Source: Octopus bimaculoides
Taxonomy: Eukaryota
Direction: 5' to 3'
Length of the DNA: 64,000 nt
NCBI RefSeq assembly: GCF_001194135.2
Contig: NC_068984.1
Span: 15,378,607 to 15,442,606 of the forward strand
The notes beneath the pieces were generated by a model. The model had not been told where the DNA came from. It saw nothing but the letters and a program-made list of their open reading frames with translations, and ran no database searches. Each line of letters starts with the position of its first letter. Position 1 is the stretch's first letter. This document shows positions 29,921 through 50,700 of the stretch, one piece after another. The position numbers and the translations under genes were made by a program.

Positions 29921-30220
29921 AGGCACGTGGCTTAGTGGTTAGGGCATTCGGCTCACAATTGTAAGGTCGTGAGTTCGATTCCTGGCGACATGTTCTGTCC
30001 TTGAGCAAGACACTTTATTTCACGTTGCTCCAGTCCACTCAGCTGGCAAAAATGAGTAGTACCTGTATTTCAAAGAGCCAACTTTGTCACATCCTGTATC
30101 TCCCAGAGAACTAACTACATTAAGGGTACACGTGTCTGCAGTCACTTGCACGTTAATTTCACGAGCAAGCTGTTCCGTTGATCGTATCAGCTGGGACCCT
30201 CGTCGTAACCAACGGAGTGC
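29921..30220 (+). mobile_element. SINE family 2 copy with a 13-bp target-site duplication
   Basis: ATTACTCTTAAGA at 29904-29916 and again at 30225-30237. Confidence 0.85.
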
Positions 30221-30597
30221 TCCTATTACTCTTAAGAAAAGCCAGAGCTTATTATAATATACATATATATATATATACAAGATATATTTTTCTGATATTT
30301 TTCAGTTCCACCAAAATTGGTTCACACAAGTACAAGAATCTGACCGGCCGCCATCACTTTGTGCCAGTCACCATCGAGAATTGGGTGTTCTTAGACCCCA
30401 CAGAGCTGATTTTCTCCAGGAAAATCAGGATAACTGCAGCCCATATGAGAAATGAGCCCCGCAAAATGGAGTGACTGCTGCAGTCAGTGTCACTAACCAT
30501 TCTCCATGCCACTTAATTCTGTATACAACCTGCTACTCTCCCCCCACCACACTTTTTCCCACATTTGTTTCCTTGGTGAGTTATGGGCTGTTTTCCC

Positions 30598-30629
<32 letters not shown>

Positions 30630-30639
30630 CTTTTAATGT

Positions 30640-31125
30640 AGATTATTTACATTTGACGGACATTTGTCCTCATCGTTTGTTGTTAACATGTTTCGCCATC
30701 CTTCATCAGGTGTCTTGGGGAAAATTTCGAACCTGGGTTCTCATTCCTAAGGTATTTTTCGATGTTAATACTATTATTCAGGCCACTGCTTGGAATCAAA
30801 CTCGGAATCTTGGGGTTAGTAGCCCATGCTCTTAACCACTATCCCATATGGCCATGGGCATATGGCGTAGTGTTTAAGAGCGCGGGCTACTAACCCCAAG
30901 ATTCCAAGTTTGATTCCAGGCAGTGACCTGAATAATAATAATAACAACAACAACAACATTGAAAAGTACCTTAGGAATGAGAACCCAGGTTCGAAATTTC
31001 CCCAAGACACCTGATGAAAGCTGGAGAGTATCAGCCGCAACGTGTTAACAACAAACAAGACGAGGACAAATAGCCATCAAATGTAAATAATGTACATAAT
31101 TCCTCATCTCTTAAATATAGAACTC
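30640..31125. mobile_element. Palindromic head-to-head dimer of a tRNA-headed element with hammerhead-like cores
   Basis: 30640-30852 is the reverse complement of 30856-31095. Each arm has an A-box (TGGCGTAGTG/TGGGATAGTGG), a B-box-like AGTTTGATTCC, an (AAT)n spacer and GACAC-CTGATGA...G(A/C)AAC. Confidence 0.8.
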
Positions 31126-31239
31126 TACTTTAAATTTGTTTACTTTCTTTTCTTCCTGTTCAAATAATGTTACTAAAAACAAAGTTCAGTTTTAAAAAAA
31201 GAATATACAAATAAATACAATACACAAGAATTCTTTCAA

Positions 31240-31815
31240 ATTCTGGCAGAAGGCCAGCAATCTTAGGGCAGAAGGACTCAATTACATCAACCCTAGTACT
31301 AAACTCATATTTATTTTATCGACCCTGAAAAGATGAAAGGTAAAGATTGAACTCGCAACATAAAGAGTCAGACGAAATGCCACCATGCATTTTGTTTGAA
31401 GTGCTATCAATTCTGCTAGCACACTGCCTTAATAATAATGGTTTCAAATTTCAGCACAAAGCCAGCAATTTTGGAGGGGGGATCGATTACATCCACCTCA
31501 GTTCTCAACAAGTACTTTCTTTATCAACATCAAAAGGATGAAAGGCAAAGCCAACTCCGGCAGGATTTGAACTCAGAATGCAAAGATGGACAAAATGTTG
31601 CTAAGCATTTTGCCAGATCGCTTCAATAACAGCAGCAGCAGCAGCAATAATAATTTTGGCACAAGGCCAGGAATTTTGTAGGGAAGAGATAAGTCGATTA
31701 TAGCAACCTAAAAAGGGCGAAAAGTAAAACTGGTCTTGGTGAATTTGAACCCAGAACATAAAGAGCTGGAAGCAAACCTGTCACCAAGCATTTTGTTTAC
31801 CAGCTCACCACCTTT
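31240..31815 (-). mobile_element. Array of three diverged family-3 SINE monomers
   Basis: Three successive AAAGGATGAAAGG/GAACTC/TTCTGC(C/T)AGC-like blocks. Confidence 0.7.
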
Positions 31816-31891
31816 ACAACAACAACAACAACAACAGGGTGGAAGAAAAAAAAAGGAAAATGTGAATGTGATAAACTTCATGTACAAGTGT

Positions 31892-31897
31892 TTTATT
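31892..31897 (-). terminator. Candidate poly(A) signal for the Y2 isoform (another AATAAA at 32035-32040)
   Basis: AATAAA on the minus strand at the end of a SINE-free ~700-nt 3'UTR-like tract; SINEs resume just beyond it. Confidence 0.5.
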
Positions 31898-32595
31898 AAC
31901 ATTTTAATTTTATCGTACTGTACCTGTATTAGTATGGTTTCCACTGCATACTAATTGAGAAGCAAGAGTTTAACTTTTTTTTTTTTTTTTAAGTGAGATT
32001 TCTCATTTTGAACTCAGCATACTCAACAAGAAATTTTATTCTCACATTCTGTCAATACTGTTTGTCATCATAAAAAAAAAAAAAAAATATAAATAAAATT
32101 AGTCCAGTCCAGTTTTCTGCTCAAGCCTCGACCCACTCTATATTTAATAATGTCTATGTATGCACGTTTTTTTTTTCTTTTTTCATTGTGAATTTTTTTT
32201 CTTGGAGCCTATGATGGGAAAGATGTGGTGTAGAGAGGACATTTCTCTCTCTCTCTCATTATTTTGTACTGTACAAAGGAGGAAAACGGTCTTCTTTTTA
32301 CATTTCAAACTCATCCTCCACATTTTAGTTGAAAGGGTTAATTAAAAAAAAAATTTTTTTTGTAAATGTTAATAGCTATCTTAACAGTTTGAGATGAAAT
32401 TAAAACCTGACCACTAAATAGCTGTTAACGTGTACCTTACAGAACAAATTAGCAAACACAATTAGCATTGTATTACAACTGTTGTTCATCAGGAAGAAAG
32501 ACAGAGGGAAGAAGAGAAAACCAAAGGTGGTTGTTACCATTAGAAGACAATGCCAAGTCAGAGGTGCTTAATGTTGGGGAGAATTACTTTGTCCA

Positions 32596-32772
32596 TTATC
32601 TACTTAAACTATGTGACCTAGCACGTCCACCCAAAAAGCAGGACTTTTTAAAAAATGGATCCTTCAAAGCTTCTTTTAGTGTTATTCGCGCCAGGGGATC
32701 ATATCGTAGCATCTTCCAAATCAAATCAAACAGAAGCACGTGGTCCTCATTGTTGGGCTCCATTATGTACCG
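32596..32772 (-). CDS. CLK2: CLK distal terminal exon Y2 (58 aa): [41 protein letters not shown]...RARSHSLSR*
   Basis: ttttaatccag|CGG acceptor, phase 0; second copy of subdomain XI; TAA stop. Confidence 0.92.
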   Translation of the reverse strand, partial: RYIMEPNNEDHVLLFDLIWKMLRYDPLARITLKEALKDPFFKKSCFLGGRARSHSLSR

Positions 32773-35700
32773 CTGGATTAAAAAAAAACGAAAAGTAGAC
32801 ATTATTAATGTAAGTAAATAAGCATATGGCCATACAGGCAATTTTCTGAAAATATTATTATTGAGTTTCAATATTTTGAAGAATGAAATAGAGACTACAA
32901 TAAAAAGAGAAACTGTTGTCCAAACAGATTAAATTTTATATGCAATTGTAGGATATCAAAATATAAAGGGAACTTGCATTTATTTATCAAGCTTGATATT
33001 TTAAAGAATACGTTTTACTGAATAGAGTTTTTTTTTTTTTTTCCCCCCATCATTAAGAAAGAAAAGAGAAAAGAAATTAACATGAAATATATCTTCAGAG
33101 AAGTCAAGTCATGAGGTCATAACCATTAATATTGAAGAAGAGAAGAAGAGAAAAAAGGGGATAAAATCATTCAGTTCTGGATTTGATTTGATAAACATTA
33201 TGGAAGAAACAAAGAAAAAGACAAAGAGAAAAAGAAAAGAAAAGAAAAAAGTGAAAATTATTTCAACTCTAAAATCTTGTACTCTTATAAAACCCATGTA
33301 AAAGGTTTTCTTTCTATTGCAATACAATTGTTCCTTCCTAAACAATAAACAAACACATCTTTTATCTTTTACTGGTTTCAGTCATTAGACTGTGGCCATG
33401 CTGGAGCACCACCTTGAAGAGTTTATAGACAAATGAATCAACCTCAGTGCTTATTTTTTTTAAAGCCTGGCACTTATTCTATCAGTCTCCTTTGCTGAAC
33501 TGCTAAGTAACAGGGATGTAAACATAAAAACACCGATTGTCAAGCGGTGGAGAAAGGGCAAACACAGGCACATACACAAAGGTATATGATGGGCTTCTTT
33601 CAGTTTCCATCTACCAAATCCACCCAAAAAGCAAAACTGAGGCAGACACAGGCACAAAAACCAGTGAATTGTCTAAATGGTTCCCGAAAGTTTGAAACTG
33701 AATATATGCAGCAGCCGTGGAATCAACTGGCACTGCGGATACTTAGTACTGCTTCCAAGCACGCAGTTTCACAGTGATCCTCTGACCACTGTTTTGTTTA
33801 TTTTCTTTTGTCTTACAGTTTAGTATTTATGAGATTGTATGTATTCACCATTATCTACTATGTATAATTGTAAAGCAATGGTATATTTTATTGGTAGCTA
33901 ACACAGGTGTTCATATGACTGACCAAGTTGAAATTCATCTAATGTAGTTCCTGTGCATATGCCACAGAGCCATCTCCTCTTTCTTTGGGTGGTAATCAAT
34001 TTAACGCCACTACCTGAGCAGCCCTTGATTCATTGCAAATATTTAGACCAAGCCATGCTTCCAGTAGCAGTTATCATCACCTTATGTCACTGGCACCCTC
34101 TAAATCTTCCTATAAGTAAATGACCAATCTCAACTCGCAGGACAATCCTTCTTCCTCTTTTCTAACATCTGTGGACTCTGATCCAAACATCACATCTAAT
34201 TCACAAACCATACATCCTATTCCCCATAGACAAATCTCTCAACCTATATTCAGTCAACCTAACAATGTCCCTTACCTTCATACAACTCAGCACACATGTT
34301 GTCCCCATTTGAGACAGCTACTATCCTACTACACTCGTTACCTCAAAGGTGATGGAGATAACCATAAACAACCACCTTCTCTAACACCTTGAATCTTTTC
34401 CCCTCTTTAATGAATGACAGAAATTCATAAATCCAGATCTACTGGAAACATGTCACTCATCAGGGATGGACTTGATAGGAAAAGCGAGTGGATTGCCGTG
34501 ATCTACTAAGCTAAACTGTACAAACTAACAGAACAAATCCCTTTTTTTTTTTTAACGCACAAACACACACTTGCAAAGGCTGGAATCAATTTTCTTTTGT
34601 TTTTTTAATTCAGTCAAATCTATGGAGTAAATTAAGTTGGTACATTGAAGCATTTACTGAAGTATTATTAATGCATTAATTCCAATGAGGAATCCAAATT
34701 TGTATGAGGATTCAGTTATCCCAGCTATGTACTTGCTATATTACACTGTTTAAATAGAAAACAATGACGTTTCGTTGACTCAATCAATCACAGTCATATA
34801 AAATTAAATTTAATTTTACTGGGGTCTTTTTTTCTTGGTTAAACTGTGCATCCAAATGCTAAAAAGAACAGTATCCNNNNNNNNNNNNNNNNNNNNNNNN
34901 NNNNNNNNNNNNNNNNNNNNNNNNNNNNNNNNNNNNNNNNNNNNNNNNNNNNNNNNNNNNNNNNNNNNNNNNNNNNNNNNNNNNNNNNNNNNNNNNNNNN
35001 NNNNNNNNNNNNNNNNNNNNNNNNNNNNNNNNNNNNNNNNNNNNNNNNNNNNNNNNNNNNNNNNNNNNNNNNNNNNNNNNNNNNNNNNNNNNNNNNNNNN
35101 NNNNNNNNNNNNNNNNNNNNNNNNNNNNNNNNNNNNNNNNNNNNNNNNNNNNNNNNNNNNNNNNNNNNNNNNNNNNNNNNNNNNNNNNNNNNNNNNNNNN
35201 NNNNNNNNNNNNNNNNNNNNNNNNNNNNNNNNNNNNNNNNNNNNNNNNNNNNNNNNNNNNNNNNNNNNNNNNNNNNNNNNNNNNNNNNNNNNNNNNNNNN
35301 NNNNNNNNNNNNNNNNNNNNNNNNNNNNNNNNNNNNNNNNNNNNNNNNNNNNNNNNNNNNNNNNNNNNNNNNNNNNNNNNNNNNNNNNNNNNNNNNNNNN
35401 NNNNNNNNNNNNNNNNNNNNNNNNNNNNNNNNNNNNNNNNNNNNNNNNNNNNNNNNNNNNNNNNNNNNNNNNNNNNNNNNNNNNNNNNNNNNNNNNNNNN
35501 NNNNNNNNNNNNNNNNNNNNNNNNNNNNNNNNNNNNNNNNNNNNAAAAAAAAAAAAAAAAAAAAATCTTAAATAAATAATACAAATAATCTAATACACAT
35601 AAATAAGGAAAGTTATCGCTGAACATCTCGATGTCGAGAACTTTGCTTGCTTTCCTTGGAAAACAAAACAGAAAAATTATACAATATTTATTCATAATAT

Positions 35701-38700
35701 TTTAAATGAGAAATTCTTCTAATTTGGCATGCATATTTAGCTATGAAAATTTGCAATTGCAAGTAAAATTACAATGGCTACCTGCAAAGTACTAATGTAT
35801 TCACAGCAACTAGTCTGAGATAAACTGATAAGAAATATGGCATATTGAATAAATAATGTTCCTAAACAACATAGTTGACTATTACAGTAAATGATGTTCG
35901 AAGTGATAAGAAAGTATTTATGTAATCATGGCTGAGTGGCAACAAGTTTGCTTCCCAACCACATGGTTTCAAGTTCAGTACCAATGCATAGTGCCTTGGC
36001 CAAGTGCCTTCTACTATAGCCCCAGGTCAACCAAAGCCTTGCAAAAGGATTTGGTAGATGGAGACTGTATGGGTGTCACCATCATGTAATTGGTGTCATT
36101 TCTTTCCAACCATCCATGAAAATGCATAGGTTGGTGACAGGAAAGGAATCCAACCGAAGTAAAATCTGCCTTTAGCATTCTGATTACTCTGTGAGATGTA
36201 TTGCTTACATATTCACATTGTTTTGAATTAATCATGTATTATCTCATAGCTTTGAGATGTCAAGAATAACATTGTAGAGTAGATGTAAGAGGCTGGATTT
36301 CGTTATAAAACAGGTAGAACATCTGGGCTGGATATGACCAGTTTAACTGCTAAAGGTCTAACAAATTCTGTCCAGCACATATGAACATGGAAAAGTTAAT
36401 GTTAAAACAATGATGACATCTGGCTAATCCTGAAGCTATTTCTTATGATGATGATGATGATCATCATCATCATCATCGTTTAACGTCCGCTTTCCATGCT
36501 AGCATGGGTTGGACAATTTGATTGAGGACTGGTGAAACCTGATGGCAACACCAGGCTCCAATCTAATTTGGCAGAGTTTCTACAGCTGGATGCCCTTCCT
36601 AATGCCAACCACTCAGAGAGTGTAGTGGGTGCTTTTACGTGTCACCCGCAATATCATTAAATCATTCATTTGTAAAATATTGATTACATCCTAGTCTTCA
36701 TATGTCACTTTACAAAGATGGCAATTTCTATATGATTCTATTCATAATAAAATTAAAGGTAAATCTTGACATTTGTCAAGCATTTCAAACTCTCACCCAC
36801 CCCCAATATAGCTTAAGATATCTAATTCTACAATACAACAGATCTCTTTATTGCCAAAATCACTTGAAATTCCATAAGGAAACTACTCTAGATGTTATTT
36901 CCTGTTTGTTTTTTGTTTTTTCTCAAAGAGGATGATTCTGTAAATGTGTAAAGTTTCCATAGGTTAAGGCAGCTGCTTTTGTAGCATAAATACTATTCCT
37001 ACCACTATCAACCAATAAATAAAGACAACAGTAATAGTTGTGTGGATAAGGTGTTTACGTCGCAACCATGCAGTTCCAGGTTCAACTCCACTGCCTGTCT
37101 TCATGGGCAAGTATGTCTTTTATCATTGCCATGAGCTGGCTAACACTGCAAATGGAATTTGTTAAACAGAAACTGCTGTAAATGTGTGTGTAAAATTAAT
37201 ATTTGGCAGAAGTAACAGAGTGACTTAATGGCCAAGAGTTTTGTGCGTTATACACACACGTGTATACCTTTCACCAATATGTATGTGACAGCAAAATCCC
37301 AAGAAGCAGTACTTGTTAAAGTCTTTTGTGATATATGGTTCAGCAGTGAGTTAAAGGCACTCCCATGTCACTCACGCCCTCAAAAATGTGGTGAACCAGT
37401 GATTAGTTAATCTGAAAATCACTTGACTTTCAAATTGGCTATTCTATGAGAATGATTTAAAAGGAATAAGCCATATTGCTCACTGTACCTGTACATTACT
37501 TTTTACTAGTTTATGACAGCAGATGTTCTGTGTTCTCTATCAAAACAAAATTCTTGTTTTTGTACACCACCAAGCAAATAACCCAATCAAGACTTGATGC
37601 TTGAACAAGTCCTAGCCATGGTGGGGAAATCAATGAATAATGTGTGAATTTGAATTTATCCTTTTCACAGATGTAGTCTTGTGAAAGTTGTATACTTCAT
37701 AATGCACCACTCAGATGATCAACAACATATTGACCATCTTAATGTTCAAGCAACTCATTGTATTTCAGCAATGCAAGGCAATTATGAAAGCGAAACACAA
37801 GAGACAACAATGACAGTAAAATTACATTGAAACTGATTATAGAAAACATCACACAGTTTATATATAAAGTTGGTATGTGGAAAATAGTCTTGGTCACCCT
37901 GAGAGAATTATTGGTGCCAAAGTTTTAAAGAAAGCACAAAATCATTAACAGTGAGATTATGATTTCTATTCTTGCGAGCATCAACCATTTGCTAGAACTT
38001 ATATTTTGAGACTTCTCATTTAAAAATTATTGAATGTCACAGCTCAATACAGACTTTAGGTGGATTGGTTGCCAACAAAATTGTAATAAGAATCAAAATC
38101 ACAATCTTCCAACTGTTGATAATGTACAAGAAAATATTTTTACAGACTAAGTTTAGAATAAGAACATTTTAGGTTGATTAGCATAACTTTCGTCAAATTA
38201 ATAAAAAAAAATTATTTTCGACTGTGTGTGTGCGTATGTAAATATTAAACTGGAATTATGCTTTTAATTCAGTTTGCAACAACTGACTGTAATACAATGG
38301 ATGGAATAGTTTAATAGTTTTGACTCCATTTTACCATATTAATTTGAATACCTGTGCGAATAGAGATACTTCAATATTAAGAAAGAGAAATCTAAATGAG
38401 TATCTTTAAGTGTGTGATAATTAGGTGAACTACATGTGTATCTAGTCTGGTGTAGAAATGAGTGAAAGCAAAGCGTGTGGATGTATGCAAAGATGAAAGA
38501 AGAAAAAAATGGTTGGGTGGAATTAAGTAATGCACTGTTACAAGCTCCTAAGTCATAACTTCAAATTCAGGTTGTTCCCAAGTGCTTCTAAGTAAGGAAC
38601 TTTCTTTGCTCCATCCACCTTATTGTCATTAAGAGATACCTGATTTTCTGGGTTAGAGTCAAAATGGCTGATCCTCCGTTAATGAAAGGTCAAGCAACTG

Positions 38701-41156
38701 ACCATCAGATCAATATGAGGGGGTTAAAGGCGTCACAGTTTGTTGACAGTTATCTATTTACAAACTGTTATTATGTCTATGACACTCAACTCCAGCCAGT
38801 CCAAGCCACTGAGCTGTATGTAGACACCATGAAGAGATACATCTCACTGCTGTAAGCAGTAAGAAGTCTGTACCCTCAAATACTCTGCCAATAGTTCCAA
38901 ACTCAAACCTCAGGCAATCTCCTGGGGCCAATAGTTCTAATCATTTATTGATACACGAATTTGATTAAAAGTTAAGATATCCAATGTAAAACTGAAGTAA
39001 ATATTATTATTATTATTATTATTATCTGTATTCTGAATTGTTACAGTAATAAAAGAAAGACAATAAATATAGTAGCAACACAAACAACTTGAAATGACAA
39101 CCTACACCCCACCCCTCCAACAGATTATTTTTCACTGTTAGTAGAGATAATTAGAGGTAATAGTGATACTAGTGGAAGAGATAGCTGCTGTCATTACCAT
39201 GAAATGTGAAGTGAAGTGAATACAAGTGGTGGGTTGGGTGAAAATGGGAGAATAACATGCTCAAGTTTAAAGTCCCATGCAACTATTAATGTTGGAGATG
39301 ATCACCTGGCAAGTAGCTGTAGCTGACATCAGATTTGCCTGGACCCTCACTCTTTGTTTTCACACAGTCACGGTCACCATGGTTTTCAGATGATAACTCA
39401 CTGCCCTGGTAACTTTTGCGCCGGTCCAGCATCCTTGGTTCCTTCGGCACGGATGGCTTGTGCTCTAGATGTGGTTGCTCTTTTAATAAGGGTTTGAAGA
39501 AAGGGTGAGCAAGTGTTTCCGCAAGAGTTATCCTGTAATGAGGCTCATACTCAAGCATCTTTTCAATGAGATCAAAGAGCTGAAGATGTTGGATCCCTTT
39601 GTCTCTTAAATAGTGCTGTAAGGAAGAAAGAGGGAGGCACACGTCACATAGAGGGGATTGGTAAAAGGTTATTGTATCTAAACTTGGTGATGTTGCCCAT
39701 TCTGCAAAGCTGTAATAGGTCAGTTTACATCAATCATTAAAAACATCCAAGCTATTTTAAATTAGTGTGACACTACCAAAATGATGAAAGCAGGCTGTTA
39801 ATAAAATTTCCCTGAAATAGCAATTGGTGTAAATAGCTTTGACAGTATTCTTTAAACACTGAGATGATATGTTCAAATTTATACATCTTAAAAGATTTCT
39901 ATTTTATTTAGAAATAAATATAAAATGGTTTTCTACAAAAATCAAGACTGACAAGAACTAAGGTATAAAAAAAAAAAATTTTACAAAAAAAAATAATAAT
40001 AATAATAATACTAATTTTACAAAGAAAAAAATAAAAGTTGAGCAGAAGTTAGCTAACTCTAAAAAACATATCACAATAAAAAATATTCTGTGAAAATCTG
40101 CTCTTTCTAATAATAGTTTTCTCAAATATTACCTTTAACTGTAATAAGAATAAATTTCTAATAAACATGTAAATTTTTAATATTCTAGATGAAAAAGAAC
40201 ATTATTTCCACCCATCCAATTTATTTATTCTTTATCTAATAGAGAAATAGCTAACATAACTAAAACTTTTGGTAGCATGTTTGCTTTCCTTGGCCGTAGC
40301 AACAGTTATCCAGGTATGATATTTTTAGAACCACTTAGAAAAGCTGCAAGATGTAATAATATCTACACACATGGTTTTGGAATTACTGATTCCTAGAGCT
40401 AGCTACTAAATACACTTGGTTACATTTGTTTTCAAGGTGTACTAAACTAATATGGAAGGAGGGAAGGTGTAAATAAGCAAATAGTATTATTTCAGTCATC
40501 AATATTTTACTATTCATGCGCACAATCACATTAGTACCTGAATATTAGTAACTTGGAATATCATTTCATCTCAACTAATACCACAACAATCAGTTTTCTT
40601 TTTTCACTTTTTATATACCTTCATCACATTGGTACAAATATGAAAACTTCAAAGGACGGACATAGCAAATGAAATATTAGTCTAGGCAAGGTTTTGTTTT
40701 CCAAGCAACATATCCACATAGTTTACAATATTTTCCCATGAAAAATGAAGGGGACATTAAAGATAGACACTGCTAATAAGCATACAAAAAGGACACACAT
40801 GCTCACTTCAAAAATGGGTTTAAATGGTTTTATGGTATGTATGTCAGTATATATAAATTGACTAGTAATAATGGCTCTACATCTTTGCTTCTTGCATTAA
40901 CTACCATAATGAAACAGAAGTGTATCTACAGAATAAGTTCATCATTCTTTTTTTTTATTATTATGAACAATGCATCTCAAATGTTACTCTGATATAATCC
41001 TTGACAGAAACACAAATGATACTTTCTCCCAAGAAAGACTCAAATGAAATTTCTACAAGAAAGGTTTAAAAAAAACAACAACAAAATAATCATGAACAGG
41101 ATGGATGGATGGATNNNNNNNNNNNNNNNNNNNNNNNNNNNNNNNNNNNNNNNNNN

Positions 41157-41189
<33 letters not shown>

Positions 41190-44100
41190 TTATGTGTTTC
41201 AGCCAAGTGGCTGCGGTCATGCTGGTGCACCACCGTGGGTGCACTATATATATATAGTTAAATATAATATAGACACAAAAGAATATGATACTAGTAAAGG
41301 AATGTTTCTCTAACTGAAAATATGAAAACATATATGGAGGAGGGGGAGTTCAAACATGACCTGATCCTAAGGAGGTGGATAAGTTCTTCTGGTATAAAGA
41401 TTTTGATATTGCTAAAACATATTACATCTATATATGTGATGTAATAAGCAAACCTGGGGACAACAAAGATTCAACAGTGAGATAAAAATAAAAGAGAACA
41501 ATGCATGTGGATAGACTGGGGAATGTAAATTGAGAAGTTTAGCATGAAAGAAGAGAAGGGAATTTACCCTTTGCAGAAAGAACGCCAACAATTTTTGCAT
41601 TCAAATTTTTGAAATAAACATTTTTTCTAGAGAAAACTTTAGACATCTTAACTCTAGGATCAGTTAACAGAAAGACATTATTCAAATGGCGTTAGGAAGG
41701 GCATCCAGCTGTAGAAACTCTGCCAAATCAGACTGGAGCCTGGTGTTGCCATCCGGTTTCACCAGTCCTCAGTCAAATCGTCCAACCCATGCTAGCATGG
41801 AAAGCGGACGTTAAACGATGATGATGATGATGATGATGATATTGAGCAGGGTGAACAACAAATTTGAGAATGAAAGGAATTACTTATCAAAAACATGCTA
41901 ATTTGGTTGCATACTGCAAACAGAAAATTAAACTTCAGAATTTTCAGATTCAATTAAATAAAATCATGTTCTCTTAAATTTTTCAACTGAATCAGTAAAG
42001 GCTATGATAAAAAGGGCAGTGACAGAACGATATGGATGGTCACCAGAAAGAATGGAGATGTTCAAAGATTAACATAGTCTTGGTGACCTGAAATATACAG
42101 GCTACCATTACAATAATAAATTAAGCCATATTATTTAAATAAGAATCGACATCACAAATATACGTATGACTAGTTTAATAATGCTAAATGGCAATGTATG
42201 GCTCAATATAACAGGTAAATTGACATAAAACCTACAAGTACAGAAATATTGACTACAGTATTACAATCATAATTGCAATCTATATTAGTATCAAAATAAT
42301 CTTCACACTAATTTGAAATGAAAATATTTAACTATCATAAGTATAGCTGTTTCTAATAACTTTATAAGGATTCTAATGTTATATCCTTCTAAATATCGAC
42401 ACCCAAGAAAAATGGACATTTAGATAAAGAAGTACAAAATGAATACAAATGGACAAGAGAGCCTGTATGTTTGGCGAGTTAAACAAGAGCTTTCAGGTAC
42501 GTAAATTCTAACTATTTAGAAGAAGGGAAGAAAAAGAAAAAAAACAGACTAGAGAGAAGGTACCCCATGAAAAATAGTGTTTGATTCATCTTTTGCTTAT
42601 TACATCATTTGTTCCATCAGTCATATAGGATTTATAAGTTGCACAAAACACATAATCTTTACATTTTAAGTATTCTAATCAAAGGAAAAATTTCTTTTAA
42701 TCATGAAATATTCTAAATTGTCTTCCTGTGGGGCAATTAATATTTTAAAAAAAAGACAAATGGATGCAAAGAAAAAGTTTTATGAATCTGTAAATGGGCT
42801 CTGTATAATGAATTTTAAATGGAATGTCAAAAATATAAGTGACGAGACGAGTCATGCTATTTGACAGTAAAAACATTTATCCTCACATAAAAGACGATTT
42901 TTGTTAAATAAATGATTTACTGTTATTGTTTGCCATACACAAGTTCAGAAGTTGTCAATGTTGCAAAAAATATAAGGTATTCTGTTTAATTATATATTAA
43001 CTCGAAACAAAGTTTAAGCCGCTAGCTTGTGAAAAGTAAAAGCAGTAGCCATGCGAAAATGGCAAATTATTAATCATTTGAAAATAAAAATAGCTTCTAA
43101 ATATGCAAAACAATGGAACAAAATTCATTTAAAAAGACAATTGGGTGATTACATACAATGAAGTTATTTAAAAACACGTTATAACATAAAACAGTAAAAA
43201 TACATGTATATAAAAGAGACAAAAAAAAAAACAAGAGAAAGGTTTAAAAAATAAAATCACACAAAAATTTTTAATTTGATTTCTGTGCAAGAAGAAAATA
43301 ATGTAAAAAAAATTTTTCATTTAGCCCCCATGCTTTTTGAAATAAACAGAAACATGCCAAAGAAAAAATTTATTGTGGGAAAATGTGTAATAAAAGTCAA
43401 TTTTGTTTTTTGTTTTTTTTTTAAATTTTAGANNNNNNNNNNTGTTTAAAATCTTGAATTTTCTGGGAGCAGGAGATGTTAGACAAAAAAAAACTAGTTT
43501 TTCAGAAACGAGTCCAACATTCGGAGGGGCCTGAATCTATTGGTTTTTAACTTGTTGGATCTGGAGGAAGGAACAAGGCACACAAATTCCTAGAATAGTG
43601 GAATTGATGCCAACACCTGTGAGAAACATAATCAAGCTGCAAGTTCCAGAGGGTTAACTTTAAGGGGACAGAAAGGACAGAGCACAGCAAGGATGATGGG
43701 AAAAGGAGAGGTGAGTGAGATGGGAGTGCCTGAGTGAGGCAGAGAGGCGACAGTACACATGTGGGCCAGAGGCTAGAGTGAATAACTTTATGCCAATCAA
43801 TCAGGTGGCTCTTTCCTGAATGTAGTCTGGGAAGGATGTTTATAATGTTAAGACAATTTGAAATACAGGAGTAAGCCTTACCTCCAAAATAAACAATACA
43901 AGAGAAATTGTTGGGGGAAAGCAGATTTGTTATACTAGTAATTAATGGGTTAATGAGGTGTGGGGGATATTAGGATGGAATTAAAAGTTCTAAGTTGAAA
44001 TAAGCCTCCTTTGTAAGCAATGAAAACCTTGTCACAGTCAATTAAGATCAACCAAAAACATGAAGTTGAAACAGAAGGGTTTAAGTTCCAGATACTAACT

Positions 44101-47100
44101 CAAGGTGAATATAGTGAAAATTAGAGCATAAGTAACGAGTAGAATGTTACAAACGTTAATTAGAAAAACATTCAGATTCATTATTAAAAACTGAAAGGGG
44201 CTCAATATTATGTATGCAAATATATTCAATGGATATAGATTAGCTTGATTAATGCTACAAACAATTTTAAAATCTACCTCTTGCATTAGTACAACCAACA
44301 GTCCAATTGGTTAAGGACCAAAGATTGTCTGAATAGGCCTTGAGAAATACTAGTATGTCTTAGGGGCAGAGTAAATAATAGCTCAATGTCTGTTGCAGTA
44401 AGCGGATAGTAGTTTTATTGATAACAAAACCTGTTAGATACTGGAGTAATTTCAAATCAACAAAGACAACTTTTTCTTACAATATAAAAAGGGAGGAACA
44501 ACCTATAATTCATTGGATATGAACACAAACTAGAACCAAAATGAAAGTGGATTGAGGAAGTAACTACATCCAAGAGGATTAGTTGTTGCAATAAAGACAA
44601 GGATATGATGTGTATAGATTATGCATGCTAAGAAAAGAAAAATAAAACAGGGCAAAAAAAAAAATCGAGAAGTATGCTAATATGCATATCCTCCCAGCCC
44701 ACAGAAGTATGGAAAAATGCATATTAAGTTGCTGTTATTGCTGCTGGCAGAGCTAAAAGACATGAGATAATTAAAAAGTAGAATTACTAGTCTAATTGTA
44801 TTGATACAAGTGTTACATATGTTATTAACATTAGAGCTAAAAACAATAGAAGTATTGATTGTGCAACAAGCTCTAGTGTTTTGCTCATTATATGCACTTG
44901 CACAAACACATTCTGCGGCTGTACATGTACATATATATATATATATATATANNNNNNNNNNNNNNNNNNNNNNNNNNNNNNNNNNNNNNNNNNNNNNNNN
45001 NNNNNNNNNNNNNNNNNNNNNNNNNNNNNNNNNNNNNNNNNNNNNNNNNNNNNNNNNNNNNNNNNNNNNNNNNNNNNNNNNNNNNNNNNNNNNNNNNNNN
45101 NNNNNNNNNNNNNNNNNNNNNNNNNNNNNNNNNNNNNNNNNNNNNNNNNNNNNNNNNNNNNNNNNNNNNNNNNNNNNNNNNNNNNNNNNNNNNNNNNNNN
45201 NNNNNNNNNNNNNNNNNNNNNNNNNNNNNNNNNNNNNNNNNNNNNNNNNNNNNNNNNNNNNNNNNNNNNNNNNNNNNNNNNNNNNNNNNNNNNNNNNNNN
45301 NNNNNNNNNNNNNNNNNNNNNNNNNNNNNNNNNNNNNNNNNNNNNNNNNNNNNNNNNNNNNNNNNNNNNNNNNNGTATTCTGTTTACATATTAAGTTGTT
45401 GCCTTCATTCCTAACATAAACACAAATCCTAGTGAGGTTTATAAATGACCCATGTTACTTGACTGATACCATTTTATCAGTCCCAGAAGACTCGGCAGGC
45501 TTTGTAAAGAATCATAACAATATACCACAAGGCATTTGTCTTAAACTCATCTAATTTCTGCCAATCCACTATCTGGAACAATCGAATGTTAAAAGGAGAT
45601 TTGTAAATTACAAATCCACTATGTTTACAAAAATTGTAAAATATTAACTTTGATTCCCCTCCTCCTCCTCCTCCCATAGGTTAAACACATTTTGAAAAGG
45701 AATCAGCTAAATAACTTGTTACTCACCTTAAGTGGTTTGCAATTTTCCCGAATATACCGCCCAGATGAGTTTTTTTCATCCCAGTCCAGTTTCCCATGGT
45801 AGAAATACTTGCTTTTTCTTTGGAGATAAATATGGGGAGTGTGGGGTTAGGGATTAGAAAAACAAACAAACAAACAAAGCCGTATGAGCTAATGAGAATA
45901 GCCATGCAGCATGCTACCCAAGTCAAACTACATTCAGTTCAATGGAAACAACTAATAAAAGGTAAGTTATATTAGTATTGAAACAAATTATGAATGCTGG
46001 CAGCAAAAAGAAAAGTGGTAAACTAATCAACTAAAGAGACAAAAATTTATGGGGTGGGAACTTGGGTTGTTACCAAGAGCTTGTACTAAATATGCTGGGA
46101 GATTAATAAATAACAAATTAGAAGTTTGGTCAGAAGAATAAAAATACAAACAGAACTTGCAGGCAGATTCAAGGATCCACAAAACACATGCATTGCCCCA
46201 CTGGCAACTACTACCAAATTTAAATGGCTAACTGAAGAAACAATTGAAAGGAAATTTGAACAAGCAAGTAAACAACATTAGTCCCCAGTGAAAAGATTTT
46301 AAGTGCTGAGCTTAAATAAAAAAATTGTGAATTAAGATTATTGAAAGAGTACATGGAAAACTATCTAGTCAGGAATGGATTAAAATAGAGTTAAACCAAA
46401 ATATAACTATTCTAGAAATATCAGTGTCACCTCCCAAAGAAGGCTTACAAGATAAGATTTTTACTTCTTCAGATATAACCTTAGAAAATTTTGGAAAAGA
46501 TCACCTTGAGAAAATAATTTGTATATTTTAGGACATTTTTTTTATTAAGTTGACACATAAATAAATGAAACTTGGCAATTTTGTTTATCCCCCAAAAAAC
46601 GAAGCTTGTTTTCAACGAAGAGATTTTACATTAGAAAGAGTTTAAGTTTAGAAATGTATTTATTACCTACAAGACAACACACCAAAAGTGTTGTGAACAA
46701 ATTAGTTGTTACCTGCTGGCACATTGCCCAAACATCATACACTTCAGTGGTTTCTTACAGTTGGAAAATAGTAAGTCATGCACTATAGTGCACTTATGGT
46801 AGTAGTTACAGAGAAGGCTGAGCATGTACTTACATAAAGTGGTTTACAGTTCTCCCTTACATATCTCCCAGCAGAAGTAGTCGAGTCCCAATCAAGGCGA
46901 CCATGCCAGAAGTAATTTGTTCTTAAAACAATAGGAACAAAATGACAAGTGAATTTTATTATAATTAAAGTTTACTTCAGGGTTATTATAATTTGAAAAT
47001 AAATCATCATTTATGAATTTTCTTTAAACTTGTGTTTCAAAATCAACAATGTCTTTGACTCATGTAATATTTACTCAATGTAAATTGCACAAGATGCCAC

Positions 47101-47703
47101 AGAATCATTTTAAATCTACTAAATATTACAACAGGAATACAAAATACATTCCATGTAAATTGTCTTTTCTTTTCTTTTTTTTTTTTGTTAATTGCACTTT
47201 GAAGAAACAAATAAACTGGTGCTTTTACACAAAAATAATTTGTATTTATTTGTTCAGCCAAAGTTCCACTGACAGCCTCTTGTCACTCTCACAGACAGTG
47301 AACCAATGATTATCCCACTGGAAAACTGTAACCAACAATGCTACAGTTCATAAAATGCAATTTAAAGTTTAAAAGATCGGTTATAACAGGACTTTGTTAT
47401 AAAAACAAAAAATTTGCTTGAAGTTGTTTGATATGCAAGTAATTACATTTTATCATATTTGAGCCATGACACTACCTTATAAACTAATTTATGAAATCAT
47501 TTTATCATATTGTCAATACAACTTTTATTGACATCTTGTGTACATTTCAACATTTCTGCATTCTTTTAATAAGCAGGTAATTACATTGCTATATTCTATC
47601 CCTACATTATTAATTGTATCTAACCCTATTGAATTATATAAGAAATTAATACCCTAAAAAAATCTAGCATGCTTTTATCTCCTAGCATTTATGCACTGAT
47701 GTA

Positions 47704-47745
<42 letters not shown>

Positions 47746-50700
47746 TTTAACAATAATTTACAATATTAATATTCTAAAGTTGGACTGATTCCAAGAGTTC
47801 ACTGAACTACTTTTAGAAATAAATACCTATGTATTTCTGCTGCACATCAAACATAAATATCAATTACAGGAAAATTTCTTTATGAAATTTGGACTAATTA
47901 AATTAGGGAGAAAGATAATAATAAAAAGAAACACCAATATGAAATGTCATGATACACTTTTGAAAATATAATTGCTTAACAATTAAAGTAATATATGTTG
48001 TAATAAATGTTAATGATTCATTATGCAACACCCCACCCCACCCAATATTACTGTCAAATTTAAAGTTAGAAAAAATATATTTATAAAATAATCACAGTTT
48101 ATCAATTAAAATATTATTTCACCTATTTAAGTTAGATTTTTGTTCTATAACCATCCTTTCTAATGTCCAATATTATTAACTTTAAGTCAATAAGCTTACC
48201 GAGATCTTTTTGCCATCCGATATGGTATACTGCCCAGTATCCGTTCCATCATTGCCAAATGCTCCTTATTGTCATGTGTCTAACCCAAAACAAAAAAGTA
48301 AATGTCAAAGCAGCCAATACAAGGTTAATTGTGTGTTCACACTAAATATATTTAAGACAAAATACAAAGATTAACAAGTATAATATATATTTTAAAAAAA
48401 TAACATTTTGCTAAGAAGTAGAATTAAAAAACAAAAATACATGTCAGCATGTCTATGTATAATTTCAAGAAAATATACAAAACTAAATCAATAATGTTGC
48501 CTATTCTATTGACTATAGAACAACAGTAATAGTCATAATGGTTTGCAAGAATTACAGTAAAATCAAATTCAGGATAAAATTCATATAGAGGCTGAAAAGA
48601 ATACTCGCAAAATAGCAAATAGCAAGTAAGTGTAACTTTGACAGGCAAAAAGTTTAATTAATAAACATCATACTATTATATAATTTAATAAACATTAAAA
48701 AAATAAGCATTAAAGCAATTTACCTGAAATAATGTGTATCCTGTGTATAGCTCAAACATGATACAACCTATACTCCACACATCACAGGGTTGAGACCAAC
48801 CTAATTCTAAAATTACAAAGAGAAAAATATCAGTTATGCAGAAAATTATTGCAGAGACACAGAGATATCATCTTTTTTTAATGTCTGCCTTCCATGTTGG
48901 CATACATATAAATACAAAGAAGTATTGATAGATAAATACAAATCATTGCAAGAAAAAAAATTCTTAATGTAAGGGCTGATTAAATCTAGCTTTACTTCTT
49001 ATTTAAGATCAAGGTCAGTCTTTGTATGAGACAAAGTCAGCAAAGAAAATTTCATTGAAAGGTTTCAACCAAGATTTATGGAATTTAAAACTAACATCAT
49101 TTAATGTTCGTATTCCATGCTGGCATGGGTTGGGTGGTTTGACAGAACTTGCTCCAGTGACTGCTTTGGCATGGTTTCTACAGCTACTATGACGTCCTAG
49201 CTCATCAGGCTACATTTGTTCTCAAAACCTCAAGTATACATATAGTTGATGTTCACTTCCAGTTATTGTAGCAACTTAACCCAGGTGAAGAATCTAAGTT
49301 GGTACACAGATCTCTCTCTCTCTTCAGCCAGGTAACCTTGTACTTCTTCAACAGCAAGAAACCTGTTTCTGTGTCTGTCTCACTATAGCCTTTCATCATC
49401 CGACACAAGATCACTTCCTCTTGAAAGTGTTTTTTTTTTTTTTTTTTTTTTTTTGTCTTGCAAGTACTTGGTGACCCTATCAGTGCAGGTGCTACTTAAA
49501 AGCACCCAGTCCACACTGTAAAGTGGTTGGTGTTTGGAAGGGCATCCAGCTGTAAAAACCTTGCCAAAACTGACCTTAACTGTACTTGTGCCACGTAAAA
49601 AGCACTAAGTCCACTCTGCTGAGTGGATGGTGTTAGGAAGGACAACCAGCTGTAAAATTCCTGCCAAAACAGTCACAGAAGTCCGGTGCAGGCTTCTGCC
49701 TGGCCGGCTCTTGTGAAATCATCCCACCCATGCTAGCATGGAACACGAACATTAAACAACGATGATGATGATGATGATGATGAATCACCAAAGCTGCAAT
49801 ACTTAAAACCAGGTAAATCTATCTGTTGAGAGCTAAGTGTATTGATCTCAGAAACAAGACTTACAGTTGCACTGAACTCGTCAGCAAGTTGTCCCATTTA
49901 TGCTCACAAAAAAAGGTAAATGATTCATAACAACTTTAATGCTCAAGTATCATTAGAATCATTACATCAGCATCTGGTGAATCCAGAATGTGGGCTCCAG
50001 CAGGGCAACATTTTCAATAGGGAACCAACCACATTCCAAAGTGAATGTGTATTGCTTTTACCAAACTAACTAAGTTTTATTCCAAAAGTTTCAAATCTAA
50101 ACCCATTCAAATTAAAGTAATTTCACTACTTCAACTGTAATATGGAACTTCTACTGGAGAAACCACAACACTCCAGAAAGTACAATTAAAATAACAAGCA
50201 ATAAAGACTAACACTTCATATAAGTGGGTGGTGGTGATAAAACATTTTTATATTTTCAAAATGTCCAAGACCCATTTTCCAAACTTTCACCATTTAATTC
50301 TTTTTAAGTTCTAAGTTTCTGAATGGATGGATAGAGTATCAATGATGAATCAGTCATGTACTGGCAATTGAATTGTGTCTGAAGTTGAGTTCATTTATCA
50401 AGCTCATCATTTTCGATCGATACTTCTCCAGCTGTTACAAATTAATTCCTTTTGTATCGTCTGAGAAACTATCTATAAAACTGCAATAAATGTAAACAAG
50501 GCTAGCAATTCCCAAGTAAAAGAAAACCATAATACACTTACCCAAAATAACTTCAGGAGCTCTATAATGCCTCGTTGATACAATAGTGCTGTGGTGTTCA
50601 TGATCAAATGTTGCAGATCCAAAGTCTATTAATCTTATATCTGTATTTTTTACTCTCCGCATATCTCGCCTCTAGAAAATGTAAAATACGAAACAAAGAT

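What the first reader, a model, noticed from the sequence alone, without database searches (positions are those of the whole stretch)
32596..46921. Interleaved X1-X2-Y1-Y2 architecture: combinatorial or coupled C-lobe isoforms
Seen: the order is X1,X2,Y1,Y2, not X1,Y1,X2,Y2, so a single block duplication cannot explain it. Four in-frame proteins are possible. Inference: either two independent exon duplications, or long-range coupled splicing/polyadenylation (e.g. X1-Y1 versus X2-Y2) that preserves co-evolved packing between the MAPK-like insertion and alphaH/alphaI. Gaps at 44952-45374 and 34877-35544 could hide further copies.
Basis: inference. Interest (0 to 1): 0.72.

Follow-up and report, generated by a model that had tools for sequence, protein, structure and literature searches.

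The report
Octopus CLK kinase alternative C-lobe exons
The 3' half of an octopus CLK2/Doa-type splicing kinase gene carries two old tandem exon duplications that give four kinase isoforms; the feature is real and public octopus annotations already contain all four, so the two choices are not strictly coupled.

Summary
On the minus strand the window holds the 3' half of a CLK/LAMMER kinase gene, most likely from Octopus bimaculoides. After the [11 protein letters not shown] exon come X1 (46921-46834, 88 nt), X2 (45817-45727, 91 nt), Y1 (39615-39306, 310 nt) and Y2 (32772-32596). All have AG/GT splice sites.

X1 and X2 must be used one at a time. Using both or neither gives an immediate stop codon.

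Y1 is not an alternative polyadenylation exon. It is a frame-shifting cassette. When it is included it is spliced on to Y2, which is then read out of frame for 8 codons (AVHNGAQQ*) and serves as 3'UTR. When it is skipped, X joins Y2 in frame and the protein ends in the family-typical RSHSLSR.

Annotated O. sinensis and O. vulgaris isoforms include X1-Y1, X2-Y1, X1-Y2 and X2-Y2. X and Y are adjacent in the mRNA, so each combination is a single splice junction. Strict X1-Y1/X2-Y2 coupling is therefore not supported.

A gap-free Argonauta locus has the same four exons and no more. Another cephalopod-like relative has a third copy, Y0.

X1, X2 and Y1 show strongly reduced synonymous change and conserved flanking introns, which is typical of regulated exons. 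I found no paper describing this. I rate it a new member of a known kind, of moderate interest.

The parts
48200..48279 (-). Constitutive LAMMER exon ([26 protein letters not shown]). It ends with two bases (CG) of a split codon.
   Evidence: collinear with transcripts L004, L001 and L002
46834..46921 (-). X1, an 88-nt alternative exon for the MAPK-like insertion. It is the derived sequence type ([13 protein letters not shown]...CKPLY).
   Evidence: present in octopus transcript L004 at 98.9% and in annotated isoforms P0240, P0242, P0243, P0248, P0249, P0253
45727..45817 (-). X2, a 91-nt alternative exon for the same segment. It is the family-typical type ([13 protein letters not shown]...CKPLK).
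   Evidence: 141 of 148 CLK homologues are closer to X2 than to X1; used in annotated isoforms P0241, P0244-P0247, P0250, P0251; conserved in Argonauta
39306..39615 (-). Y1, a 310-nt cassette exon. It encodes alternative alphaH/alphaI helices plus a tail about 60 residues long. Its donor is CCAG|gtgatc. Including it shifts the reading frame of Y2.
   Evidence: (99% identical to L004, spliced to Y2); omega 0.03 for the core and 0.12-0.19 for the tail
32596..32772 (-). Y2, the coding part of the constant last exon. Read in frame 0 it gives [11 protein letters not shown]...RARSHSLSR*.
   Evidence: omega 0.1-0.2 in frame 0, about 0.5-1 in the other frames; in-frame use in P0243 and P0251
32747..32749 (-). 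TGA stop codon reached in the +1 frame of Y2 when Y1 is included (...[11 protein letters not shown]).
   Evidence: P0242 ends AVHNGAQQ
32040..32595 (-). 3'UTR of the last exon. Polyadenylation-signal candidates lie at 32148 (ATTAAA) and 32040 (AATAAA).
   Evidence: L004 aligns down to 32193; signals
46704..46833 (-). Intron block just downstream of X1, conserved between octopus and Argonauta.
   Evidence: the block 46947-46704 is 89% identical
45818..46255 (-). Intron block upstream of X2, conserved between octopus and Argonauta.
   Evidence: the block 46255-45675 is 75% identical
40145..40510 (-). Conserved non-coding intron element 0.5-0.9 kb upstream of Y1. A core of about 130 nt is about 90% identical to Argonauta, and no frame is open.
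39038..39305 (-). Conserved intron block downstream of Y1. A matching conserved block lies upstream of Y1 at 39616-39697.
   Evidence: the block 39697-39038 is 82% identical
48725..48816 (-). Constitutive exon ([28 protein letters not shown]), listed for context.
50542..50673 (-). Constitutive DFG / activation-segment exon, listed for context.

Best explanation
This is the 3' half of the single CLK2/Doa-type LAMMER kinase gene of an octopus, most likely O. bimaculoides. Two neighbouring C-lobe exons were each duplicated in tandem, independently and long ago.

The exon for the MAPK-like insertion exists as X1 and X2, of 88 and 91 nt. Both lengths are 1 mod 3, so exactly one must be spliced in. 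Using both gives [13 protein letters not shown], and using neither gives a stop within four codons.

The exon for the last helices exists as Y1 and Y2. Y2 is the original last exon. Y1 is an upstream 310-nt cassette. If Y1 is included, it supplies the helices and a new conserved tail, and translation ends 8 codons into Y2 in the wrong frame, so Y2 becomes 3'UTR. If Y1 is skipped, X joins Y2 in frame and the protein ends with the conserved RSHSLSR.

The two choices combine freely enough that all four X-to-Y junctions appear in annotated octopus isoforms.

What is shown: the exon structure, the frame arithmetic, the X1-Y1-Y2 transcripts, the purifying selection, and the annotated four combinations. 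What is inferred: that the isoforms differ functionally, at the surface of the MAPK-like insert and in the C-terminal tail, and that the choices are regulated through the exons and their flanking intron elements.
For: -
- The octopus transcript L004 (SRR3401912, named as an octopus sample in PMC11662614) reads LAMMER-X1-Y1-Y2 and ends AVHNGAEQ*. Transcripts of a relative, L001-L003, show the same Y1-to-Y2 junction.
- The Y2 frame-0 ORF is intact in four sequences, with omega 0.1-0.2, against 0.5-1.0 in the other frames.
- X1 has omega 0.04, the Y1 core 0.03 and the Y1 tail 0.12-0.19.
- X2 matches the family consensus better than X1 in 141 of 148 homologues.
- Annotated isoforms cover all four pairs: X1-Y1 (P0240, P0242, P0248, P0249, P0253), X2-Y1 (P0241, P0244-P0247, P0250), X1-Y2 (P0243) and X2-Y2 (P0251).
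- Argonauta hians has the same four exons in the same order, with intact splice sites.
- Between octopus and Argonauta, synonymous differences are 2 of 35 sites in X1+X2 and 8.5 of 63 in Y1, against 46 of 122 in constitutive exons (P about 1e-5 each). Y2 has 14.5 of 36, like the constitutive exons. Conserved intron blocks flank X1, X2 and Y1 only.
Against: - I saw no read-level data. The X2-containing and in-frame-Y2 isoforms are known to me only as annotation models from O. sinensis and O. vulgaris.
- Every assembled transcript I could retrieve uses X1 and includes Y1.
- O. bimaculoides has only the X1-Y1 model among the listed members (P0242).
- Argonauta X2 carries non-conservative changes at conserved positions (LDW to LKW, CKPL to CKPF). 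These leave its omega near 0.9 on a very low dS.
- I found no conserved RNA pairing that would enforce mutual exclusion.
Confidence: 0.85

Rival explanations
1. Coupled choice: X1 is used only, or mostly, with Y1 and X2 with Y2. This would preserve co-evolved packing between the MAPK-like insertion and the last helices.
For: - All retrieved assembled transcripts pair X1 with Y1, or with Y0 in a relative.
- X2 and the ends of Y2 (the RY start and the RSHSLSR end) both look family-typical.
- The last residue of X and the first residue of Y differ in step: PLY-HY versus PLK-RY.
Against: - X2-Y1 is the most frequent annotated form, and X1-Y2 is also annotated.
- In other invertebrate transcriptomes, X1-like exons join RY...RSHSLSR-type Y exons (P0016, P0042, P0037).
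- The helix core of Y1, not Y2, is the more family-typical (120 versus 27 homologues). There is therefore no clean split into an ancestral pair and a derived pair.
- X and Y are adjacent exons, so no long-range mechanism is needed or implied.
Confidence: 0.1
2. X2, and/or Y2 read in frame, are not protein-coding alternatives. They would be relics or 'poison' exons used for unproductive splicing, in the way CLK genes regulate themselves.
For: - Including both X exons gives an immediate stop codon.
- CLK genes are known for autoregulatory splicing; this comes from general knowledge and was not tested here.
- No assembled transcript with X2 was retrieved.
- Argonauta X2 shows relaxed-looking amino-acid changes.
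Against: - In the frame used when X1 is skipped, X2 keeps an open frame and about 83% identity to arthropod Doa, although its synonymous sites are saturated against X1.
- Y2 frame 0 has omega 0.1-0.2 and a conserved stop position.
- Annotated proteins use both exons in frame.
Confidence: 0.05
3. Assembly artefact: the duplicated exons are collapsed or duplicated haplotypes, or are mis-joined across the N runs, and more copies are hidden in the gaps.
For: - The region holds four N runs.
- One real exon of this gene, the beta3/alphaC exon, is missing from the window.
Against: - The copies are deeply diverged: X1 and X2 share 19 of 29 residues, and synonymous sites are saturated.
- The same order is seen in the gap-free Argonauta locus.
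- Transcripts are collinear across the gaps.
- The gaps are flanked by simple repeats.
Confidence: 0.02

Closest known systems
Mutually exclusive duplicated exons in other CMGC kinases (JNK/MAPK8-10 exon 6a/6b; p38alpha/MAPK14 CSBP1/CSBP2). Recalled from general knowledge, not tested here.
   Same: Tandemly duplicated, homologous exons inside the C-lobe of a CMGC kinase. Exactly one is used, giving isoforms with an altered surface but the same fold.
   Different: The kinase family, the segment (here the MAPK-like insertion after alphaG) and the lineage (cephalopods) all differ. Here a second duplicated exon lies directly next to the first.
Tandem exon duplication-derived substitutions as a class (PMC8373072)
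   Same: Old duplications, both copies under purifying selection, and homologous substitution of a protein segment.
   Different: The Y pair is not mutually exclusive. The upstream copy is a frame-shifting cassette that turns the downstream homologous copy into 3'UTR.
Human CLK1/CLK3 kinase domains (PMC2667211)
   Same: The [11 protein letters not shown] alphaG helix, the HTD catalytic loop, the MAPK-like insertion with its conserved Trp, and the C-terminal helices. Y2 has its best solved-structure matches to CLK1, CLK4, CLK2 and CLK3.
   Different: I found no report of alternative versions of these two exons in the CLK papers I searched. The known CLK isoform regulation, from my own knowledge, acts elsewhere, through exon 4 skipping and intron retention.
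Drosophila Doa isoforms
   Same: The orthologous LAMMER kinase, with many isoforms. A 15-insect survey lists Doa among genes with mutually exclusive exons (PMC3303723). It shares the C-terminal RSHSLSR-type ending seen in arthropod homologues.
   Different: From my own knowledge, Doa isoforms differ mainly in N-terminal non-catalytic exons driven by alternative promoters. I found no evidence that the kinase C-lobe is varied there.
Stacked alternative 3' exons of tropomyosin genes (exons 9a-9d). Recalled, not tested.
   Same: Homologous alternative C-terminal exons, where an upstream coding exon can be followed by a downstream one that serves as UTR.
   Different: An unrelated protein. In the octopus gene, translation ends through a frame shift into the downstream copy.

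Membership tests
CLK / LAMMER (Doa) protein kinase | [11 protein letters not shown] signature in helix alphaG | tested here: met
   The exon 48279-48200 translates to [26 protein letters not shown]. The motif definition is from PMC2667211.
CLK / LAMMER (Doa) protein kinase | HTD (instead of HRD) catalytic loop, and DFG | tested here: met
   [13 protein letters not shown] at 50918-50826 and [26 protein letters not shown] at 50671-50543.
CLK / LAMMER (Doa) protein kinase | MAPK-like insertion after alphaG, with the conserved Trp that packs on alphaG | tested here: met
   Both X1 (RLDWD) and X2 (KLDWD) keep the Trp and the G-R-Y-V/I...CKPL segment. Mapping to CLK1 residues 400-437 follows PMC2667211.
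CLK / LAMMER (Doa) protein kinase | Complete catalytic core, including the beta3 Lys and alphaC Glu | tested here: inconclusive
   The exon [30 protein letters not shown]... is present in octopus transcript L004 and in O. sinensis proteins. It is absent from the readable window, so it is presumably in a gap, probably 53262-53554.
CLK / LAMMER (Doa) protein kinase | Closest relatives and solved structures are CLKs | tested here: met
   PDB hits are CLK1, CLK4, CLK2 and CLK3. Homologues are named CLK2 or Doa. The 90% cluster holds 'CLK2' of O. bimaculoides, O. sinensis, O. vulgaris and Argonauta.
Mutually exclusive exon pair from tandem exon duplication (X1/X2) | Adjacent homologous exons with the same phases and intact AG/GT sites | tested here: met
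   They share 19 of 29 residues. Both start in phase 2 and end in phase 0.
Mutually exclusive exon pair from tandem exon duplication (X1/X2) | Using both or neither destroys the reading frame | tested here: met
   88 and 91 nt are both 1 mod 3. Using both gives a stop 14 codons into X2. Using neither gives a stop within four codons in Y1 or Y2 (sequence).
Mutually exclusive exon pair from tandem exon duplication (X1/X2) | Mature products carry exactly one copy | tested here: met
   The 14 annotated cephalopod CLK2 proteins I read, and all transcripts, have X1 or X2 and never both. This is annotation-level evidence for X2.
Mutually exclusive exon pair from tandem exon duplication (X1/X2) | A dedicated exclusion mechanism (competing RNA pairing, steric hindrance or incompatible splice-site types) | tested here: inconclusive
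   The intron between the copies is about 1 kb, so there is no steric block. Both donors are GT, U2-like. The inverted matches found are at chance level, and the duplex predictions are not consistent between octopus and Argonauta.
Frame-shifting cassette exon upstream of a homologous last exon (Y1/Y2) | The upstream copy has both an acceptor and a used donor, and is spliced to the last exon | tested here: met
   L004, L001, L002 and L006 all contain the Y1|Y2 junction ...TTGCCAG|CGGTACATAATGG.
Frame-shifting cassette exon upstream of a homologous last exon (Y1/Y2) | The skipped form exists and the last exon is selected as coding sequence | tested here: met
   P0243 (X1-Y2) and P0251 (X2-Y2). 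Y2 frame 0 has omega 0.1-0.2.
Coupled (co-ordinated) alternative splicing of two sites | Only the cognate combinations occur | tested here: not met
   All four combinations are annotated. X2-Y1 is the commonest among the listed models. Quantitative bias was not tested.

The most novel reading that the evidence does not exclude
The four isoforms may not be used at random. The X and Y choices could be quantitatively linked, or switched by tissue or temperature, through the unusually constrained exon sequences and the conserved intron elements. That would give an ectothermic cephalopod a tunable set of CLK 'thermometer' kinases that differ at the MAPK-like insert surface and in the C-terminal tail.
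Probability: 0.2. Interest if true: 0.6.

Novelty: new member of a known kind. Interest (0 to 1): 0.36.

Why it matters
CLK kinases control alternative splicing. The recent CLK papers I retrieved treat them as temperature sensors, and report that molluscs have only one CLK gene (PMC12795684).

Here that single gene diversifies its catalytic domain itself. It does so at the insertion that buries the LAMMER helix and at the C-terminal helices and tail, rather than through gene duplication.

The Y arrangement is a tidy example of how a duplicated last exon can become alternative without mutual exclusion. The first copy included ends translation, and the later copy becomes UTR. A relative has extended this to three copies.

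There is also a practical point. The O. bimaculoides reference protein XP_014781440.2 represents only one of the four forms. It also lacks an essential kinase exon because of an assembly gap.

Tried and rejected
- **Metagenome scan.** I scanned metagenome contigs for the start of Y2, to see every exon joined to it. It returned 0 hits, because the JGI metatranscriptome contigs that carry the gene are not in that collection.
- **Protein searches for X2 isoforms.** Searches with X2-containing queries returned no octopus X2 protein. This is not evidence of absence. The octopus CLK2 cluster was not returned at all, and only appeared through an exact-sequence cluster look-up.
- **Search for Y0 in the window.** I used tblastn at E<5 and blastn with 7-nt words against the Y0 exon and its intron from the relative. 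Nothing was found. The conserved block 40145-40510 is not a decayed Y0.
- **Search for MXE isoform pairs in other species.** I looked among the retrieved homologues for an identical core with a different X. Only cross-species matches turned up.
- **Docking/selector RNA pairing.** The inverted matches in 45380-48200 are at chance level: an 11-nt perfect match is expected about once. Duplex energies between conserved intron blocks gave no pair with a strong z-score in both octopus and Argonauta.
- **Rfam.** A scan of 30000-50000 gave no family at gathering score.
- **Alternative polyadenylation after Y1.** The nearest AATAAA is 340 nt beyond the read-through stop, and all transcripts splice Y1 to Y2. 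I rejected this as the main mode.
- **Structure prediction of the four combinations.** Not run. The tool returns confidence values and no contacts, so it could not separate the hypotheses.

Full report
**What is there**

The window is AT-rich eukaryotic DNA (about 35% G+C) with 14 N runs. Between 62140 and 32193 the minus strand carries a CLK/LAMMER kinase gene. tblastn with CLK homologues finds these exons, listed in transcript order from high to low coordinates:
- GEGTFGK at 62138-62076
- [14 protein letters not shown] at 52229-52140
- [10 protein letters not shown] at about 51936-51868
- HTDLKPEN at 50918-50826
- DFG...HYRAPE at 50671-50543
- [12 protein letters not shown] at 48816-48725
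- [16 protein letters not shown] at 48279-48200
- two copies of the next exon
- two copies of the last coding exon

Y2 has its best solved-structure matches to CLK1, CLK4, CLK2 and CLK3.

**Exact anatomy**

The LAMMER exon ends with CG, two bases of a split codon.

| Exon | Coordinates | Length | Splice sites | Encodes |
|---|---|---|---|---|
| X1 | 46921-46834 | 88 nt | ttttaag\|A...TAT\|gtaagt | [29 protein letters not shown] |
| X2 | 45817-45727 | 91 nt | tccaaag\|A...AAG\|gtgagt | [30 protein letters not shown] |
| Y1 | 39615-39306 | 310 nt | cttacag\|CAC...CCAG\|gtgatc | alternative last helices plus a long tail |
| Y2 | 32772-32596 | 177 nt | aatccag\|CGG TAC...AGA TAA | [11 protein letters not shown]...RARSHSLSR* |

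Both X exons end in phase 0 and both Y exons start in phase 0.

Because 88 and 91 are both 1 mod 3, using both X exons gives [13 protein letters not shown]. Using neither gives a stop within four codons. The X pair thus has the arithmetic of mutually exclusive exons.

By the CLK1 structure paper, [11 protein letters not shown] is helix alphaG. The MAPK-like insertion spans residues 400-432, with a two-strand sheet, Trp419 and the CLK-specific helix alphaH (PMC2667211). X covers about residues 408-437. Y covers the remaining helices and the C-terminus.

**The organism**

A Logan contig from SRR3401912 (L004) matches the window's exons at 97-100%. A virome paper describes that run as an octopus metatranscriptome (PMC11662614).

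The 90% protein cluster of L004's ORF holds 'CLK2' proteins of O. bimaculoides, O. sinensis, O. vulgaris and Argonauta hians. The window shares the [10 protein letters not shown] and AVHNGAQQ variants with the O. bimaculoides protein XP_014781440.2 (P0242). The O. sinensis and O. vulgaris proteins read KEPRIVDRRK instead. P0242 also lacks the same exon that the window lacks. The window is therefore most likely O. bimaculoides.

**How Y1 and Y2 are really used**

The octopus transcript L004 reads LAMMER-X1-Y1-Y2, and its ORF ends ...SYSYLPAVHNGAEQ*. Transcripts of a more distant relative end ...YLPAVHNGARL* (L001-L003, from JGI samples 3300019054 and 3300018952).

This tail is the start of Y2 read in the +1 frame. 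The Y1 donor (CCAG|gt, phase 1) is joined to the Y2 acceptor. In the window this gives G|CG GTA CAT AAT GGA GCC CAA CAA TGA, with the stop at 32749-32747.

Y1 is therefore an internal cassette exon, not an alternative polyadenylation exon. Y2 is the constant last exon. It is coding when Y1 is skipped, and 3'UTR after 8 codons when Y1 is included.

The frame-0 ORF of Y2 is nevertheless intact in the window, in L004, in L001 and in L002. It ends at the same RSHSLSR* and has omega of 0.1-0.2, against 0.5-1.0 in the other two frames. It must therefore also be translated in frame.

RSHSLSR is the C-terminal ending of many arthropod Doa/CLK2 homologues and of other invertebrate homologues.

**Are all four combinations used?**

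The cluster look-up gave 14 annotated cephalopod proteins.

| Combination | Annotated proteins |
|---|---|
| X1-Y1 | P0240, P0248, P0249, P0253 (O. vulgaris / O. sinensis); P0242 (O. bimaculoides); P0252 (Argonauta) |
| X2-Y1 | P0241, P0245, P0247, P0250 (O. sinensis); P0244, P0246 (O. vulgaris) |
| X1-Y2 | P0243 (O. vulgaris CAI9721972.1) |
| X2-Y2 | P0251 (O. sinensis XP_029635633.2) |

Their exon boundaries are exactly those predicted above.

X and Y are adjacent in the mRNA, so each combination is defined by one intron and one junction. No long-range information is needed, and short reads can settle it. Strict coupling of X1 with Y1 and X2 with Y2 is contradicted at annotation level.

I could not see reads, so a quantitative bias is not excluded. 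All assembled transcripts I retrieved were X1 plus Y1.

**Age and selection**

Synonymous sites are saturated between X1 and X2 (pS 0.94) and between Y1 and Y2 (pS 0.97). These are two old, separate duplications. A single block duplication cannot give the order X1, X2, Y1, Y2.

The gap-free Argonauta hians locus (L013, no N) has LAMMER at 68016, X1 at 69236-69322, X2 at 70110-70199, Y1 at 73688-~73997 and Y2 at 79785-79958. It has conserved splice sites and no further copies. Both duplications therefore predate the Octopus-Argonauta split.

The relative behind L001-L003 has X1, Y1 and Y2. It also has a third copy, Y0 (188 nt, [51 protein letters not shown]), with its own stop codon. Y0 lies 1.1 kb upstream of Y1. 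When it is included, both Y1 and Y2 follow as UTR. Y0 is absent from the readable window and from Argonauta.

Of 148 CLK homologues, 141 are closer to X2 than to X1. X2 therefore keeps the family-typical sequence and X1 is the derived type. In contrast, 120 are closer to the helix core of Y1 than to that of Y2, while Y2 keeps the typical RY start and RSHSLSR end. There is no clean 'ancestral pair versus derived pair'.

X1-like exons (YFWHGRLxWD...CKPLY) occur in other, unidentified invertebrate transcriptomes. There they are joined to RY...ERSHSLSR-type Y exons (P0016, P0037, P0042).

**Signs of regulation**

Synonymous differences between octopus and Argonauta are as follows.

| Exons | Synonymous differences / sites | Fraction | Binomial P vs constitutive |
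|---|---|---|---|
| Seven constitutive exons | 46 / 122 | 0.38 | - |
| X1 + X2 | 2 / 35 | 0.06 | 1.6e-5 |
| Y1 | 8.5 / 63 | 0.13 | 1.1e-5 |
| Y2 | 14.5 / 36 | 0.40 | not different (0.64) |

Conserved intron sequence flanks X1, X2 and Y1, but not the constitutive exons:
- 130 nt downstream of X1
- about 440 nt upstream of X2
- 82 nt upstream and 268 nt downstream of Y1
- a separate 366-nt element at 40145-40510

This is the usual signature of regulated alternative exons.

I found no convincing conserved docking/selector pairing. The only exclusion mechanism shown by the sequence is the reading frame, with a premature stop if both or neither X exon is used.

**The gaps**

The four N runs inside the finding are intronic and flanked by simple repeats. 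Exon order across them agrees with L004 and with Argonauta.

Gaps in this scaffold do hide exons, though. The beta3/alphaC exon ([39 protein letters not shown]; L004 nt 382-498) has no match in the window. It must lie between 56031 and 52232, where the 53262-53554 run is. The O. bimaculoides reference protein lacks it too.

**Comparison and novelty**

The X pair is a standard mutually exclusive pair from tandem exon duplication. It resembles the duplicated C-lobe exons of JNK and p38 (recalled from my own knowledge) and the class reviewed in PMC8373072.

The Y stack is a less common arrangement: a frame-shifting cassette that demotes its downstream homologue to UTR. It is still ordinary cassette splicing.

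My full-text searches found no description of alternative C-lobe exons in CLK/Doa or in cephalopods. A phylogenetic study reports a single CLK gene in molluscs (PMC12795684). The isoforms themselves are already present in public annotation of O. sinensis and O. vulgaris.

I therefore rate this a new member of a known kind: real, well supported and of moderate interest.

Noticed in passing
window 52233-56030 (N run 53262-53554): The exon encoding the beta3 Lys and alphaC ([39 protein letters not shown]) is present in octopus transcript L004 and in O. sinensis proteins. It has no match in the window. The O. bimaculoides reference protein XP_014781440.2 (P0242) lacks it too, so that model describes a kinase without its catalytic lysine because of an assembly gap.
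   Followed up: yes
window 56031-56072 (-): A 42-nt RS-rich micro-exon ([14 protein letters not shown]) lies between the glycine-loop exon and the missing beta3 exon. It is included in some annotated O. sinensis isoforms and skipped in others and in L004. This is a third alternative site in the same gene.
   Followed up: partly
window 36454-36607 and 41687-41840: Two copies of a SINE-like dispersed repeat lie in opposite orientation on either side of Y1. They are 154 nt long and 95% complementary, with 5.1 kb between them. In the pre-mRNA they could pair and loop out Y1, or serve as an RNA-editing substrate. The element has at least 8 copies in the window, so the arrangement may be chance.
   Followed up: partly
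window 40145-40510 (-); L013 72983-73337: A non-coding intron element is conserved between Octopus and Argonauta (79% overall, with a core of about 130 nt at about 90%), 0.5-0.9 kb upstream of Y1. It has no open frame, no Rfam match and no similarity to Y0.
   Followed up: partly
L002 1441-1628; L006 1-169: A cephalopod-like relative has a third Y-type exon, Y0 (188 nt, with its own stop codon), 1.1 kb upstream of Y1. Transcripts X1-Y0-Y1-Y2 exist in which both later copies are untranslated. Y0 is absent from the readable window and from Argonauta.
   Followed up: yes
window 46834-46921, 45727-45817, 39306-39615 versus L013: Synonymous divergence between Octopus and Argonauta is 3-7 times lower in X1, X2 and Y1 than in the neighbouring constitutive exons. 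X1 differs at 1 of 87 bases, whereas the LAMMER exon differs at 10 of 78 with no amino-acid change.
   Followed up: yes
L013 70110-70199: Argonauta X2 reads [30 protein letters not shown]. The otherwise invariant LDW has become LKW and CKPL has become CKPF. This may reflect relaxed or changed constraint on X2 in that lineage.
   Followed up: no
P0015, P0016, P0037, P0042, P0053, P0101 (L008 for P0016): X1-like exons (YFWHGRLxWD...CKPLY) occur in transcripts of other unidentified invertebrates, joined to RY...RSHSLSR-type last exons. The X1 type, and perhaps the X duplication, may therefore be older than cephalopods.
   Followed up: partly
L009/L010 449-748: A genomic contig of a more distant species carries a Y1-type exon ([41 protein letters not shown]...) followed by a different long tail. 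The Y1 type is therefore not confined to octopods.
   Followed up: no
window 34877-35544, 41115-41156, 44952-45374, 53262-53554, 58421-58486: These N runs abut (TA)n, (CA)n or poly-A tracts, so the assembly broke at simple repeats.
   Followed up: yes
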